The position numbers and the translations under genes were made by a program. Shown here piece after piece: positions 50,991 to 57,499 of a DNA stretch of 64,000 nt. The notes below the pieces were generated by a model, which was not told the DNA's origin, did no database searches, and saw only the letters and a program-made list of their open reading frames with translations. The stretch's first letter is position 1. The number at the start of each line of letters is the position of its first letter. This stretch comes from Obrimoposthia wandeli (lineage: Eukaryota): positions 310,001 through 374,000 of the forward strand of contig CDROCS010001825.1 of the NCBI GenBank assembly GCA_977020255.1, given 5' to 3'.

Positions 50991-52958
50991 ACAATCTATT
51001 ACTGAAAATAAGAAACTGTAACAATATTGAAAAATTCAAGAAACAGCTGAAGACATTCCAATTCTGAAAATATTGCGAAAAATAATGAAAAATAGGAAGG
51101 GCTTTTAAGTAATACATCATAGATGTATTAGATATTAACGCTATATTAAATATATATTAAACATAATTTCTTTAAATCATCTAAAACGATTTTAGATAAT
51201 CTAATTTTCAAAAGCGTTCTGATATTTTCATCCGAATTTTTAAAGGAAATTTAAAAATGTAATGCATAATTTATCTATAAATCTGTCCAAAATTAAATGG
51301 CTCATGTGACTGTAGCCAAAATATCCTAGAATCAGTGGTGATTTTCCCAATTGAAGTCTGTTCAGTGTTTGCCCTCGCATAAAAGTTCACATTTGCTTTG
51401 CTAAAGTACCTCAATAATACCGTCCCCAAAACCCATGTAGAACATCAGTCACTATGTCTGCAGGAAATTGCACATATGTCGAATTTGCCATAGACGTGCA
51501 CTGACGCGTATGGGAGATAAATCTAGATTTCCGCTCCTCCACCTCTTTCTCCTAGTCAGTCAGTTAGGCAATCGTTATCGACACCGGGAAATTCGATCGG
51601 GAAGACCAATTGCTGGAGCCAATGCAAGTTTCTGCCATACTACTCGATATGTTCTGTCAAGTTTATTACTTCTTTAAATTTATTTGATTTTGATGAAGGA
51701 AAAACTACAGTGAATAGCTATTTCATTTAGATTTCATACAATTTTATCTAATTTTATCCAAATCGAGAATTGGATTTGTAGACAAACGAAATAGTAAGAC
51801 AGTTCAGAATTTGAGTTCATAAATTGGGTCGATATTGGACCAAAATTACTAGCTCATCATTTTTGTTTTGTCCGATTTCTAAGGGCCTCCCAGGACATTT
51901 CATGCATTTATATCCCAATATTTAAAAATAGAACTCAATGAGATAAAATCTAAATCATAAAAATAACAATAATTACATAATACGTATTGAACAATACAAA
52001 TATTTAAAGCACAAAAATAACCAAAATGACATGAATATTTAGTAATATTTCTTTATTAACTATTCGTTTAATGTTGATTGATTTAGTCTCTTTATTTTTT
52101 CACAACAAATAGTTTTTCGGAAATTACTAAGAATGTTGAAGAGGTTGATATACATAATTTCATTTGTTAGTAACAAAAAATCTGATTGTAACAATAGCTG
52201 AGTCTAATTCAGCAAAACATGGTTTAGTTGGACCTTCAACATTATCATCATCATACTCATCAGTATCAAATATTCAATTACAATATGGCCTATGTCATGC
52301 TGTTCAAACAGTAAACCCTCATCTACTTCTATTATTTCATTAAACTTTGAATTTATATTAAAATATTTCATAATCATTATCAATATCATCAGATTCCAAA
52401 ATTATCATATATAGATTAAATGAATGACTACAGCCATTGTTAATTGTAGTTACCATATTTTAAGAGTTAAAACAAATATTTATGCATTTTAGAGTTGTAT
52501 AACATAATAAATTTGTGATTAGTTGTTATAAAATGGCGAAAAAATAGTAATATGTGAATAATTATCATAAGAGGAAAAATTGTTATAAATGGAATGTTTG
52601 TTGCCTTATTATTAAAATTTCGTAATTTCTATTTAGAACTTGTTATGGTTATAATCGGGAAGTCACTGTATTTCTAATTAATTTTTATTTATTTAGTTTC
52701 CGCTTTATAAATTATGATGAAGTATACCAAACAGAAATAATAATTTATGTGCTTTAAAATAATTCATGATAAAAAAATTATATACGTTTGCAAAAATTAT
52801 TAAATAATATTTATCAAATTCCAAGTCATTTGTTTAGTATTACACTTTCTAAATTTAACTTTGATTTTAAATTACAGAAATAGAATTAGCTCCATAAATC
52901 GGTTGATAATATTTATTTTACATTATTAACTTCGTGTTAATTACTGAAATTATAAATA

Positions 52959-55900
52959 GTAGGTAGAATGATGGAGTCTAGATCACTTGAGTCCCCCCAC
53001 GAAAAGGGTCGGACTCAGTTTTGAGTTGTCTCACCATAAGGGGCGCGAGGGGTCAAGTGATCTAGACTCCATCCTTCTAATGGTCGGCCAACATACCCAA
53101 GGGGTTGTGGTCGTCCATAGATGAAAGGGTTGGGCTTAGTTTTGACTTGAAGGTTTGAAGGTATAATTGAGGTCAACTATGGTTGGCCATCACATCTAAA
53201 GGGTTGTGGTCGTCCATAAATCAAATGGTCGGGCTAAAGACAAAATCAAGTTTAAAATATCAAGGTTTTAGTACATGGGTGGAATCATCTTTAGAAGACG
53301 AATTCATCCATAAAGGTATGGTCGTCCATAGATGAAGGGTTAACAAAACGTTTTTAAAATTTTAAAAATATATATATTTTGTGAGGATTATTATCTTTAT
53401 TAATGTCACCAGTTACACTTTCAGCCATACTCTCTAACTTAGTTCATTTACATATACATTCGATATTACTAACTTTTAAAAAAAAACTTACTCTTGTTAT
53501 CACTTAGCATTATTTTCAACCATATGCACTATCTCATTTATTTACATTGGGATTTACATTTACATTCATTCATACCTTTCTAACGACTTACTTGTCTATA
53601 GTTTCTTCTTACATTTAGTACTATTTTCATTCATACCATCAAACATAGTATTGTTTTCTATTAATCTTGTCGTAACTTAGTCATTCTTACTTTTAACATA
53701 ACTCAGTATCACAGCTTCTTACAGTTGCTTACTTCTTATTAATCTAACTGTAACTTAACATAACTTTTATTTATACGAATACTCTATTTTAATTTATTTA
53801 TAGTCTAAATTATACTCACATTCAATCATACTCTCGATACTCTTTATTTTCTTTAAAATTACATTCACTTGCTTAGATTCTCACTTGTCTTTGCATTCAC
53901 TTGAATTCATACTTGCATTCATTTACATTCATTCTAACTCTCATTTATTTAAACTAGCATTCAATTCATTAATATTTTTACTAATTTTCATTCATACTTG
54001 TACTTGACATTCGTACTTGCAATCGTATTCTTTCTTACTTGTACTTGTAGCTACATTCATAGTTGCATTCATTTACATTCATTTACATTCATTGTTAATT
54101 GTACTTTCTTTATTTATATTTACACTTGTATTAATTCATACAATCGATAATTCATTTTATTTGTTGTCACAAGAGATTTTTAATATTTTAGAAAGTTGAA
54201 AAATAAATAGAAATACTAAGTTGTTAATCGAATATGTACATAATTTGATTTATTTACATATAAAACATTATAATTAAAGATTTGGTATTCTAATTTATAA
54301 ACAGAACTTCAGTAACTTTCAGTAACTTTGAATAACAAGTGTTTGCAAATTAAGTTACAATATTCGATACAAATAGAAAATATGTATAAATTAATTTTTG
54401 CAGTTTTAAAAATAAAATATATTTTTTAATATATTTTCGAATATATAAAGTGGCAATTAGATAATATTAATACTCAAATTATATAAATATATTTTTAGCC
54501 CTGTTCTTTGAAAATAAAGAATTCAAATTTATCACATTTAAAAAAAAATCTATTAAGGAATGTTATCAAATGAGATAAGGAATTTTTAATGATTTATGTG
54601 TATATGTGAATGAATTTTTGATCTTTATATCATATGAAAATAACAATATGTGAAAATAAAATTAACATGTGAAAATTCACATCTTAATTATTATAATTTC
54701 ATCAGATTGTTACATCAATTTCATTGATTGATAGTATTAATTTAATAATTAGCTAGCTAGTAAATCTTTTTTTTTCACATGATCCTTAATTTTATTCATC
54801 AAATTCCTTATTTATATTAAGAAAATTAATAAAACATTTGCCTAAATTTAAATATTTATCATAAATAGTAAAGTATTTTGAGGTTATTAAAATAATTTTG
54901 CCTAACATTTATTTTAAATAATGATAATTTAATATTTTATTGTTTTAATATTTTATTTTAACAAAAAACTAACAAAATAATTCGGCACAAATTTAAATCA
55001 AAATATATTATTATTTTTGAAATTACAAGTATTTTTATTCATTTTTCATCAGGACTCCATAATTTTATTAAACACAATTGTTTAATTACATTATTAACAT
55101 TAATAAAAATTTTGCGTAAATTTAAATATTTATTTAAAAATATATATTAGTAAAGTATTTTAAGTATATTTAATTTTTTTAAATATTTATTTAAAAAACC
55201 TGTAAATTAAAATTTGTTTAAATTTTTCAAAAACTAACAAATTAAATTGGCCCAAATTTAAAAATAAATTATTATTTTGAAAAAATTACAAGTATTTTTG
55301 TTTTCCACAATTATTTCTTAATTTTATTAAATAAAATTGTTTAATTACATTAATAAAATAAATAAAAAATTGCGTAAATTTAAATATTTATGAAACGAAA
55401 TGATAGTAAAGTATTTTGAGTTTATTAGGAATTTTTCTTAATATTTATTTTAAATAATGATACTTTAATATTTTATTTTAAAAATTCGTTAAATTAAAAA
55501 TTGATTAACTTTAACAAAAATAACAAAATAATTTGGCAAAAAATTTAAATTTAAAAATATTTTTATTTTTGAAATTACAAGTATTTTTATTTTTCATCAG
55601 GATCCCTTAACGTATGCTTAAATAAAAATTTGTTTAACTTTAACAAAAATAACAAAAATAATTTGGCACAAATTTAAAATAATTATTATTTTTAAAATTA
55701 CAAGTATTTTTAAAAAAAAAATTTATCAGGACCTTTTAATTTTATTAAACAAAATTGTTTTCACATAGCGTAATACATTCCTTAACTGATAAGAGTGAAC
55801 TTTGATTACATTTTCACATATAATAATTGATTGATTACTATAGGATTCCTTAACTTATGCAAATCTGAACCTTAACTTGTGGATGACCATAAATTTTTTA

Positions 55901-56692
55901 CCATGTACTTAAAACTATGAAATTCCAACTTTTTTTAACCCTTCATCTATGCTTCACTTGCTTTTGTCTATAGCCAGACCCCTTGATTTATGGACGACCA
56001 TACTTTTATGGATGAATTTGCCTTCTAAAGATGATTCAAACCATGTACTAAAACATTGACTTTGTCTTTAATACGACCCTTTGATTTATGGACGTCCATG
56101 ACCATTTAGATGTGATGGACAACCATAGTAGACCTCAATTATACCTTCAAGTCTTCAAGTCAAAACTGAGTCCGACCCTTTCATATATGGACGACCACAA
56201 CCCTTTGGGTATCTTGGCCGTCCATAGATGATCATGACCATACCTTCAAACCTTCAAGTCAAAACTAAGCCAAACCCTTTCATCTATGGATGACCACAAC
56301 CCCTTGGATATGTTGGTCGACCATAAGAAGAATGGAGACTAGATCACTTGACCCCTCCCCCTCCCCCTCTCCCTCCCCTATATCATAACCTTTCTGAGCC
56401 AGACCCTTTCATCTATGGACGACCATTCCTTTATGGATGAATTTGGTTTCTAAAGATGATTCCAACCATGTACTAAAACCTTGATATTTTAAACTTGATT
56501 TTGTTTTTAGCCCGACCCTTTGATTTATGGACGACCATGACCATTTAGATGTGATGGCCAACCATAGTATATCTCAATTATACCTTCAAACCTTCAAGTC
56601 AAAATTGAGCCCAACCATTTCCTCTATGGACAACCAAAACCCCTTGGGTATGTTGGTTGACCATTAGAAGGATGGAGTCTAAATCACTTGCT

Positions 56693-56738
<46 letters not shown>

Positions 56739-57196
56739 ATCAGCGCAAGCTAATGACTTGCACTTACTAGGGATTCCTCGTTCATGTGGAAAAATTGCAA
56801 TCCACAATTCCTGATACGACAGTGTTTCAGCAGGTTACCCGGCCATTTCTAGCTAGGATTGAATACTCGCTGATACTGCCATTGTAGCGCGCGTGCGGCC
56901 CCGGACATCTAAGGGCATCACAGACCTGTTATTGCTCCATCTCATTTGGCTAAAAGCAATTGATTCCTCTAAGAAGTCAATTTGTGCTACTTATCACACA
57001 AATACTCGTTCGTTATCGGAATTAACCAGACAAATCACTCCACCAACTAAGAACGGCCATGCACCACCACCCACTGAATCAAGAAAGAGCTATTAATCTG
57101 TCAATCCTCACAGTGTCCGGACCCTTATGGTGAGACAACTCAAAACTGAGTCCGACCTTTTTCAGGGGGAGTCATGTGATCTAGACTCCATCCTAC
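52959..57196. mobile_element. Non-autonomous foldback/MULE-like DNA element, 4238 bp, in iGluR intron 1
   Basis: Termini GTAGG...CCTAC flanked by 8-bp direct repeat TATAAATA (52951-52958, 57197-57204); left arm 52959-53340 is inverted relative to 56403-57196 (minus rDNA insert); a second degenerate arm copy at about 55935-56380; AT-rich internally repeated core; no transposase ORF. Superfamily assignment is inference. Confidence 0.85.
56691..57123 (-). pseudogene. 18S rRNA gene fragment (3' major domain) embedded in the TIR
   Basis: Contains GACGGGCGGTGTGTAC (56707-56722), AAGGGCATCACAGACCTGTTATTGC and CCACCAACTAAGAACGGCCATGCACCAC, all reverse-complement universal 18S motifs; 433 bp, no flanking rDNA. 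Confidence 0.95.
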
Positions 57197-57499
57197 TATA
57201 AATAATCGCTAAAAAATAAACAAAATATTTTCAAAGTTAAACGTATTTTTCATTTTATATTTATAAAAATATGTATTAATATTTATTTTTAAAATTGTAA
57301 GTTATACTGTAAAACTAAATATAAGATTTTATTACTAATTTATTTCGTTATAAATTAATCATTAGAACCTACCATTTTTAAAGTCGATTTGGAAAGCTTT
57401 CGTATAGCGGTTGATGCCCGTTTCTATAGGATCGTACCAATCTTTTAAAATCGAGTTTTCAGCTCTTTTAAGTAATTTTATCGAACTTTATTCATATAA

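What the first reader, a model, noticed from the sequence alone, without database searches (positions are those of the whole stretch)
52959..57196. 18S rDNA fragment captured inside the TIR of a 4.2-kb foldback element
Seen: the right TIR is continuous with the inverted left TIR except that about 11 nt (acccctcgcgc) are replaced by 433 bp of 18S (56691-57123), with 2-nt cc microhomology at the right junction; GTAGG/CCTAC ends and 8-bp TSD TATAAATA are intact. Established: Pack-MULEs capture host fragments, mostly described in plants and normally between the TIRs. Inference: templated insertion at a break in the TIR, creating a potentially mobile rDNA-carrying DNA element in an animal.
Basis: partly seen in the sequence, partly recalled or inferred. 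Interest (0 to 1): 0.78.

Follow-up and report, generated by a model that had tools for sequence, protein, structure and literature searches.

The report
18S rRNA retrocopy inside transposon hairpin
The 18S piece in this foldback transposon's terminal repeat is real, but it is one of many hundreds of reverse-transcribed 18S rRNA fragments scattered through this genome that landed in the repeat's hairpin, not gene cargo picked up and carried by the transposon.

Summary
Observation confirmed. A 4.2-kb non-coding foldback element (52959-57196) has GTAGG/CCTAC ends and an 8-bp TSD (TATAAATA). Its right terminal repeat is interrupted by 432 nt of 18S rRNA (56692-57123, minus strand = 18S 1212-1662), replacing about 11-12 nt.

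Interpretation changed. The same 18S block has about 840-1,120 candidate places genome-wide. In 60 places chosen only by a 21-mer, 56 of 62 hits stop at 18S 1662-1670 next to unrelated DNA. Their 5' ends are variable: none stop in 1283-1344, 18 of 35 stop in 1269-1282, and the rest run out by 1191/1192. In yeast these positions are Um1269/Gm1271/ac4C1280 and the reverse-transcriptase-blocking m1acp3-pseudouridine 1191. Older copies carry an older 18S allele (1399T), so copies were made continuously from the working rRNA.

The window's piece has 3 private substitutions, against 8% divergence between the repeat arms. Its junctions occur nowhere else, and 29 other family copies lack it. So it is most likely an in-situ insertion of an rRNA cDNA at the loop/stem boundary of the terminal hairpin, not Pack-MULE-like capture or mobilised cargo.

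First-stage notes on other pieces of this genome also report rRNA pieces in transposons (unchecked).

The parts
52951..52958 (.). Left target-site duplication TATAAATA
   Evidence: identical 8-mer at 57197-57204. A second family copy (L020/L015) has the 8-bp TSD TTTGGCAA.
52959..53345 (+). Left terminal inverted repeat, intact, starting GTAGGTAGAATGATGGAG, with ~99-bp subterminal repeats
   Evidence: 2,480 candidate family matches in the genome; the 40 scored are 86-94% identical. The terminus is conserved in 29 copies at unrelated sites.
52964..53079 (+). Terminal hairpin of the intact left TIR: 27-nt outer arm, ~62-nt loop ending in a G-run, inner arm TCAAGTGATCTAGACTCCATCC. It shows the pre-insertion state of the right end.
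   Evidence: I16, 27 nt, 96%. DNA fold -32.2 kcal/mol, z = -6.9, 0 of 200 shuffles as good. The hairpin is present in all family copies examined.
53346..55955 (.). Internal AT-rich non-coding region with 258-bp and 129-bp repeats; no transposase
   Evidence: one 60-aa ORF only; tandem repeats; GC 0.23.
55956..56690 (-). Inner part of the right TIR: subterminal repeats (extra copies relative to the left end) up to the inner hairpin arm CAAGTGATTTAGACTCC (read on the minus strand)
   Evidence: (I1-I5, D1, D2).
56691..56691 (-). One extra base at the junction between the 18S 3' end and the TIR inner arm (G on the 18S-sense strand; the 18S gene has A here)
56692..57123 (-). 18S rRNA-derived insert = 18S positions 1212-1662; 4 substitutions (one of them the shared old allele 1399T) and a 19-nt internal deletion
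57124..57196 (-). Outer part of the right TIR (hairpin loop and outer arm) ending in CCTAC
   Evidence: (I7, I12).
57197..57204 (.). Right target-site duplication TATAAATA

Best explanation
The insert is a tail-less, 5'-truncated retrocopy of mature 18S rRNA. It entered an already resident, non-autonomous foldback transposon in place, at the loop/stem boundary of the element's terminal hairpin. The likely sequence of events is as follows. (1) A cellular reverse transcriptase, of unknown source, starts copying 18S rRNA at A1662/A1663 in helix 44; this start point is shared by hundreds of copies. (2) The cDNA grows towards the rRNA 5' end and stops at obstacles. Genome-wide these are a block at 1269-1282 and a final limit at 1191/1192. 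This particular cDNA stopped at G1212. (3) The cDNA was joined into a chromosomal break in the G-rich loop next to the inner hairpin arm, with loss of about 11 nt, 2-3 nt of microhomology at one junction and one extra base at the other, and no target duplication. (4) It then decayed slightly (3 private substitutions and a 19-nt deletion). Shown here: the common 3' end, the non-random 5' ends, the time series of copies, the uniqueness of the junctions, and the relative youth of the insert. Inferred: that the template was RNA, which enzyme did it, why 1662 is the start, and whether the break came from hairpin fragility (favoured, about 60:40) or from a retrotransposon endonuclease (target-primed reverse transcription).
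For: Copy number:
- 1,123 candidate places for the insert sequence.
- 233 exact copies of the 21-mer ending at 1662.
- 841 candidates for 18S 1563-1803, most ending at 1662-1670.

Fixed 3' end: in 60 places taken in contig order, 56 of 62 hits end at 1662-1670 next to unrelated DNA.

No 'other half': 18S 1663-1803 has only 62 candidates. About 17 run through the site and only 1 starts at 1663.

5' ends:
- 0 of 35 copies end in 1283-1344.
- 18 of 35 end in 1269-1282 (P about 1e-12 against a uniform spread).
- 15 of the remaining 17 end by 1192, and none is left by 1180.
- 11 of 13 copies that reach 1212 stop within 1191-1212.

Match to known modifications: the U of GAC-U-CAAC is position 1191 in this 18S, and the GGGTGGTGGTGCATGGCCG motif puts the yeast Um1269/Gm1271/ac4C1280 equivalents at the same numbers. 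In yeast the acp group on Psi1191 blocks reverse transcriptase with a strong stop at 1192 and is added in the cytoplasm (PMC4872110). The modification list is in PMC5699541.

Continuous production from the gene: copies with 1399T have a median of 2.7% other substitutions, against 0.3% for 1399C copies (p = 6e-9).

Flanking repeats: flanking direct repeats of at least 8 nt occur in 10 of 57 copies against 2.5% of controls; L103 has at least 36 bp.

This copy:
- Both junctions are unique.
- 29 other family copies lack the insert.
- There are 3 private substitutions in about 431 nt, against 23 of 286 differences between the arms.
- The insertion point is at the base of a -32 kcal/mol hairpin.

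Independent second hit: a younger 18S piece (1507-1661, 98.7%) is joined at the same point of a roughly 22%-diverged relative of the TIR (L114).
Against: - The rRNA modifications of this species are unmapped. The link to modified sites rests on yeast data and conserved sequence.
- The 1191/1192 limit is statistically modest on its own. At least two fixed-3'-end copies cross it (L050 at 1010, L068 at 1181). At least 40 other places cross 1191, mostly a different, older repeat class.
- Nothing explains why copying starts at 1662.
- Most copies, including this one, have no clear target duplication, so classic endonuclease-driven retrotransposition is not shown.
- No reverse transcriptase is linked to the process.
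- The junctions could not be checked with reads.
- If the two arms were already different when the element inserted, the age argument weakens.
Confidence: 0.78

Rival explanations
1. DNA-level capture. While the transposon, or the gap left by its excision, was being repaired, synthesis switched template to rDNA and copied 433 bp into the TIR, as in Pack-MULE-type transduplication. This would produce a transposon that can carry rDNA around.
For: The junctions look like repair junctions: a small deletion, 2-3 nt of microhomology and one filler base. Termini and TSD are intact. 18S pieces also sit at an internal deletion junction and at truncated edges of other family members (L073, L077, L114), which is where abortive gap repair would leave filler DNA.
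Against: The same block, with the same 3' end, lies at hundreds of sites unrelated to this family. A DNA template gives no reason for ends to pile up at 1269-1282 and 1191/1192 or for one end to be fixed and the other variable. No other copy shares the junctions. The piece lies inside the TIR, not between the TIRs.
Confidence: 0.08
2. The 18S block is itself a SINE-like mobile element. A master copy of 18S 1192-1662 is transcribed and retrotransposed, and one copy happened to land in the TIR.
For: High copy number, a uniform 3' end and 5' truncation are what a SINE/LINE partnership produces. A shared variant (1399T) is present in 21 of 55 copies.
Against: Many copies are 100% identical to the functional 18S over more than 400 nt. 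The only widely shared variant sorts by age, as expected for a substitution in the rRNA gene itself. There is no tail, no LINE-derived 3' part, no promoter-bearing head and no common flank. No copy shares the window piece's private changes, since the best non-self hits are the pristine ones.
Confidence: 0.07
3. Assembly or library artefact: an rDNA- or rRNA-derived read was wrongly joined into the TIR.
For: The junctions could not be checked with reads. The only runs found come from one sample and study, probably the source of the assembly. rDNA is high-copy and prone to chimeras.
Against: The piece differs from the gene by 4 substitutions and a 19-nt deletion, and it carries the old 1399T allele. 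The flanking TIR halves fit each other exactly around it. Hundreds of analogous copies of all ages (74-100% identity), some with target duplications, exist on large contigs.
Confidence: 0.03

Closest known systems
Tailless retropseudogenes (Schmitz et al. 2004; Noll et al. 2015, PMC5322556)
   Same: They are cDNA copies of abundant non-coding RNAs without an A-tail, 3'-truncated at defined positions shared by many independent copies. For long RNAs they are also 5'-truncated. They are generated continuously from the functional RNA.
   Different: In human only two 18S and ten 28S cases were found, whereas here there are hundreds to about a thousand from a single 18S block. The mammalian ones were selected for clear TSDs and show A-rich priming complementarity typical of L1. 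Here most copies lack an obvious TSD, the start site (…GAUUGA|AUGA) is not A-rich, and the partner enzyme is unknown. The 5' ends tracking rRNA modification sites are not mentioned in the passages of that paper that I read.
Pack-MULEs / transduplication by DNA transposons (Jiang et al. 2004; cited in PMC10946416)
   Same: A host-derived fragment lies within a TIR-bounded, TSD-flanked non-autonomous DNA transposon.
   Different: Pack-MULE cargo is genomic DNA placed between the TIRs, and the cargo-bearing element amplifies. Here the piece is inside a TIR hairpin loop, has RNA-type boundaries, is single-copy, and belongs to a genome-wide class unrelated to the transposon.
Endonuclease-independent retro-insertion and cDNA capture at double-strand breaks (L1 in repair-deficient cells; Ty1 cDNA capture in yeast) - from my own knowledge, not checked in the library
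   Same: No target duplication, a small target deletion, junction microhomology, 3'-truncated template, and insertion at pre-existing lesions.
   Different: Those events are rare and involve retrotransposon RNA. Here the template is rRNA with one preferred start, and the recurrent target is a transposon hairpin.
Foldback (FB-type) transposons
   Same: Long TIRs built from subterminal tandem repeats, hairpin-forming ends, a non-coding body, and many dispersed copies with TSDs.
   Different: The TSD is 8 bp (Drosophila FB has 9 bp, from memory). The superfamily is not established because no transposase partner was found.
rRNA-derived SINEs (SINE28, 5S-derived SINE3; mentioned in PMC10946416)
   Same: Dispersed rRNA-derived repeats.
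   Different: Those are composite elements with a LINE-type tail and master-copy evolution. These copies track the functional gene and have no added parts.

Membership tests
Pack-MULE-type cargo-carrying DNA transposon | Non-autonomous element with family-typical TIRs and TSD | tested here: met
   The TIR family is confirmed in 29 or more copies. 8-bp TSDs are seen in two copies. Membership of the MULE superfamily itself is not shown: no transposase was found, and an 8-bp TSD also fits hAT, P and Merlin.
Pack-MULE-type cargo-carrying DNA transposon | Cargo copied from genomic DNA and lying between the TIRs | tested here: not met
   The piece lies inside the right TIR's hairpin loop. Its ends match those of a genome-wide class with a fixed 3' end and RT-stop-like 5' ends.
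Pack-MULE-type cargo-carrying DNA transposon | The cargo-bearing element has been transposed or amplified | tested here: not met
   Both junctions are unique in the 1.35-Gb assembly. No copy shares the private mutations.
Tailless retropseudogene | Copy of a cellular RNA without an A-tail | tested here: met
   18S 1212-1662 is followed directly by TIR sequence. There is no A-run here or in the 65 sampled 3' flanks.
Tailless retropseudogene | Defined 3' truncation point shared by independent copies | tested here: met
   56 of 62 sampled hits end at 1662-1670, 49 of them at 1662-1664. The window copy ends at 1662.
Tailless retropseudogene | Flanking target-site duplication from target-primed reverse transcription | tested here: not met
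   In this copy about 11 nt were deleted and there is no duplication. Genome-wide only about 10 of 57 copies have flanking repeats of at least 8 nt.
Tailless retropseudogene | Made by a LINE enzyme through internal priming (complementarity between the nicked target and the RNA at the 3' junction) | tested here: inconclusive
   There is an excess of 1-3 nt identity with the 18S continuation at the 3' junction: 35 of 65 flanks start with A against 34% background, and the run-length excess is. No A-rich motif and no identified LINE partner.
Foldback transposon | Long TIRs of subterminal tandem repeats, non-coding body, TSD | tested here: met

The most novel reading that the evidence does not exclude
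This animal genome carries a large, continuously produced population (hundreds to about 1,000 copies) of cDNA copies of one block of mature, fully modified cytoplasmic 18S rRNA. Their 5' ends are a genomic fossil record of reverse-transcriptase stops at rRNA modifications (m1acp3-Psi1191, Um1269/Gm1271). Their single start point in helix 44 reveals a specific, so far undescribed way of priming on the small ribosomal subunit RNA. Candidates are an rRNA fragment cut at 1662, or a retroelement polymerase with a fixed acceptor site. RLE-type LINEs and hepadnavirus-like elements without an integrase are reported in this genome by other, unchecked scan notes. Hairpins of foldback transposons would be preferred capture sites.
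Probability: 0.3. Interest if true: 0.75.

Novelty: new variant of a known kind. Interest (0 to 1): 0.55.

Why it matters
The insert itself is not a new way for DNA transposons to mobilise rDNA. The broader pattern is more useful.

- rRNA retrocopies are rare in mammals, but here one 18S block has been copied into the genome hundreds of times over a long period.
- The copy ends appear to record where a reverse transcriptase starts and stalls on mature ribosomal RNA inside cells. This gives a sequence-only readout of rRNA modification sites.
- Because the copies preserve old alleles of the rRNA gene (1399T to C), they also give an internal time series of 18S evolution.
- They give a handle on which retroelement enzyme reaches ribosomes.
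- For annotation, 18S-like hits inside transposons in this genome should be read as retro-insertions, not as captured genes or rDNA loci.

Tried and rejected
- More loci. The census therefore covers 60 of 233 exact-motif places, and several interesting places (C1787, C4887, C3245) could not be read.
- A site-specific element or break at 18S 1662/1663. I looked for recurrent junctions. Places with 18S 1663-1803 almost all run through the site, and the 3' flanks of the fragments share nothing. This is not supported, but rDNA arrays are barely assembled.
- Self-priming by the 18S 3' end (AUCAUU pairs with AAUGAU at 1662-1667). Rejected, because it would exclude G1661/A1662 from the copy or leave 18S 3'-end sequence at the junction, and neither is seen.
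- Priming through the similarity between the TIR inner arm (AAGTGATyTAG) and 18S 1662-1671 (AATGATTTAG). The registers do not fit the observed junction, so I treat it as coincidence.
- Shared ancestry of the window insert and L114. Rejected: the TIR parts differ by about 22% while the 18S parts differ by about 1%.
- Enrichment of 18S pieces in this transposon family (3 of 60 sampled places). Not claimed, because family fragments are common (a second copy lies in this window) and the background is uncertain.
- A sharper test of the 1191/1192 limit was saturated by at least 40 copies that cross 1191, mostly an older repeat class. It was uninformative.
- Other motif-ended 18S fragment classes: too few cases to draw conclusions.
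Full report
THE OBSERVATION

- The element spans 52959-57196. It starts GTAGG and ends CCTAC.
- It is flanked by TATAAATA on both sides (52951-52958 and 57197-57204).
- The left end (52959 to about 53345) is collinear with the reverse complement of the right end: 286-nt arms at 92% and 48-nt arms at 94%.
- One block interrupts the right end. Rfam calls that block eukaryotic SSU rRNA on the minus strand (322 bits).
- Against this genome's own full-length 18S (L043, 1803 nt) the block is 18S 1212-1662 (window 57123-56692). It carries four substitutions and one 19-nt deletion.
- One extra base (56691) lies at the 18S-3' junction. A GG at the other junction could belong to either partner.
- About 11-12 nt of a G-rich run are missing compared with the left TIR.

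THE HOST ELEMENT

It is a genuine, old, non-autonomous foldback family.
- The TIR query has 2,480 candidate matches, and the 40 scored are 86-94% identical.
- Twenty-nine copies at unrelated sites share the terminus GTAGGTAGAAGGATGGAG.
- Two loci (L020/L015) are the two ends of one copy and show a second 8-bp TSD, TTTGGCAA.
- The body has no ORF above 60 aa and consists of AT-rich repeats.
- The outermost ~115 nt of each end form a strong hairpin: 27-nt arms, -32.2 kcal/mol, z = -6.9.
- The 18S block sits at the 3' edge of that hairpin's loop, directly against the inner arm.
- None of the 29 other copies has anything inserted there.

WHAT CHANGED THE READING

The 18S block is not special to this element.
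- It has 1,123 candidate places in the 1.35-Gb genome.
- The best non-self matches are 435-475-bp fragments on different contigs. They are nearly identical to each other and to the functional 18S, and their flanks are unrelated.
- All of them stop at the same 18S position, …CGCTACTACCGATTGA, as the window's piece does.
- The 21-mer ending there occurs 233 times.

I fetched the first 60 places in contig order, so the choice did not depend on any fragment property.
- 56 of 62 hits end at 1662-1670, and 49 of them at 1662-1664.
- By contrast, 18S 1663-1803 has only 62 candidates.
- With a query spanning the site, about 17 places run through it and only one starts at 1663.
- So there is one fixed end, no matching 'other half', and no recurrent element junction at that site.

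THE 5' ENDS

The 5' ends are variable but far from random. Of 55 independent sampled copies:
- None ends in the 62 nt from 1283 to 1344.
- 18 of the 35 that get that far end within 1269-1282 (P about 1e-12 against a uniform spread).
- 15 of the remaining 17 end before 1192, and none remains by 1180.
- Adding the longest copies from the first search, 11 of 13 copies that reach 1212 stop within 1191-1212. Two end exactly at 1191/1192.

These positions match known rRNA modifications.
- In this 18S, the U of the universal GAC-U-CAAC motif is position 1191.
- The GGGTGGTGGTGCATGGCCG motif places the equivalents of yeast U1269, G1271 and C1280 at the same numbers.
- In yeast these are m1acp3-pseudouridine 1191, Um1269, Gm1271 and ac4C1280 (PMC5699541).
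- The acp group at 1191 blocks reverse transcriptase with a strong stop at 1192, and it is added only in the cytoplasm, late in 40S maturation (PMC4872110).

A fixed 3' start, 5' truncation and stops at modified bases together are what cDNA synthesis on mature rRNA would give. Copying of rDNA would not give this pattern.

Caveats:
- The modifications of this species are not mapped.
- The 1191/1192 limit is only moderately significant by itself.
- Two fixed-end copies pass it (1010 and 1181).
- At least 40 other places cross 1191, mostly an older, different class.

THE COPIES SPAN A LONG TIME AND FOLLOW THE GENE

- Identity to the present 18S ranges from 74% to 100%.
- One difference, 1399 C>T, is shared by 21 of 55 copies.
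- The T copies have a median of 2.7% substitutions elsewhere, against 0.3% for the C copies (p = 6e-9).
- So T is the older allele of the rRNA gene, and the fragments were produced continuously from the working gene product, not from a master copy.
- This also shows that they are real, ageing genomic insertions.
- A minority carry flanking direct repeats: at least 8 nt in 10 of 57 against 2.5% of mismatched-pair controls, and at least 36 bp in L103. Most do not.
- At the 3' junction there is a modest excess of 1-3 nt identity with the 18S continuation.

THIS COPY IN PARTICULAR

- It has 1399T and three private substitutions in about 431 nt (0.7%). The two TIR arms differ at 23 of 286 positions (8%).
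- Searches with 101-nt and 171-nt probes across each junction found no other place with the 18S-5'/outer-TIR junction.
- For the other junction they found only one related place, L114.
- L114 is an independent event. It is a different piece (18S 1507-1661, 98.7% identical to the gene), joined within 1-2 nt of the same point of a TIR relative that differs by about 22%, and it lacks the outer arm and loop.
- Other sampled 18S pieces lie at an internal deletion junction of a family member (L073) and at the edge of a truncated one (L077).
- The family is common, however: a second copy ends at about window 1369. I therefore do not claim statistical enrichment.
- Two independent hits at the same loop/stem boundary suggest that this hairpin is a preferred break or capture site. 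By rough estimate, chance would give this in about 3-12% of cases.

CONCLUSION

The insert is best explained as an in-situ insertion of an 18S rRNA cDNA into a break at the foldback hairpin, long after the element arrived. It is not Pack-MULE-like capture, and there is no sign that the rDNA-bearing element ever moved.

The closest described class is the tailless retropseudogene (PMC5322556).
- Those share the lack of an A-tail and the defined 3' truncation points.
- In human, 18S contributes only two cases and 28S ten.
- 28S/L1 chimeras number 18 in a recent survey (bioRxiv 10.1101/2025.02.02.635956).
- What differs here: the abundance, the single start in helix 44, the scarcity of target duplications, and the apparent imprint of rRNA modifications.

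What starts the copying at 1662, and which enzyme does it, remain open. I rejected self-priming by the 18S 3' end and priming through TIR/18S similarity because the registers do not fit the junctions.

LIMITS

- The only runs found come from one sample and study.
- That the host is an animal rests on other notes of the scan and on its transposon content. I did not test it.
- First-stage notes on other pieces of this genome (an 18S piece in a DD37E transposon, a 5.8S piece in a MULE repeat with a 12-bp duplication, and 28S pieces in a Polinton and dispersed) fit a genome-wide process, but they are unchecked.

Noticed in passing
L047:1047-1570 and L048:1076-1567 (upstream of their 18S parts); places listed: A separate, older class of about 20 or more 18S copies (18S 638 to 1803, with a shared internal deletion around 1454-1507, 93-94% identical to the gene). 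Copies share about 527 bp of upstream flank at 85%, so this 18S piece appears to be embedded in a larger repeat. It may be a true transposon-carried or segmentally amplified rDNA fragment.
   Followed up: partly
L114:1374-1620 (G000:C324): A second, independent 18S piece (1507-1661, plus a 43-nt piece 1580-1622 and a T7 run) is joined to a diverged foldback TIR at the same loop/stem boundary as in the window. The outer arm and loop are missing.
   Followed up: yes
L067 (G000:C161:263740-265587): Two 18S retro-fragments (1371-1662 and 1271-1662) lie in inverted orientation about 200 bp apart. An 18S 5' piece (8-218) directly abuts the 1662 end of one of them, making a composite that suggests template switching or twin priming.
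   Followed up: no
L103 (G000:C695), flanks of the 18S piece 1258-1662: This fragment is flanked by a direct repeat of at least 36 bp (atccccctacttgatgtgtgtctttcaggacaaagg). That is an unusually long target duplication. L071, L104 and L108 have repeats of 13-25 bp.
   Followed up: partly
18S position 1399 across L002-L112: The dispersed fragments preserve an old allele of the rRNA gene: 1399T in older copies and C in younger copies and in the present gene. A second recurrent difference is 1431 C>A (8 of 59). The fragments therefore act as a dated archive of 18S evolution.
   Followed up: yes
window:50-1369: The right-hand end of a second, degraded copy of the same foldback family lies here (internal region at about 53-486, terminal hairpin at about 1294-1369). 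Its hairpin has no insert.
   Followed up: partly
window:26990-27577 (+): The only ORF above 180 aa in the window (195 aa). It matches helix-turn-helix domains of Tc1/IS630-type transposases (HTH_7 2e-7, HTH_Tnp_IS630 2.5e-4), so it is a Tc1/mariner remnant.
   Followed up: partly
L050 (G000:C38) and L004/L051/L052 (G000:C2989): Longer pristine 18S pieces start at 1010 or 1013, close to the yeast Cm1007 equivalent. They end at 1660 or 1683. These are rare copies that read through position 1191.
   Followed up: no
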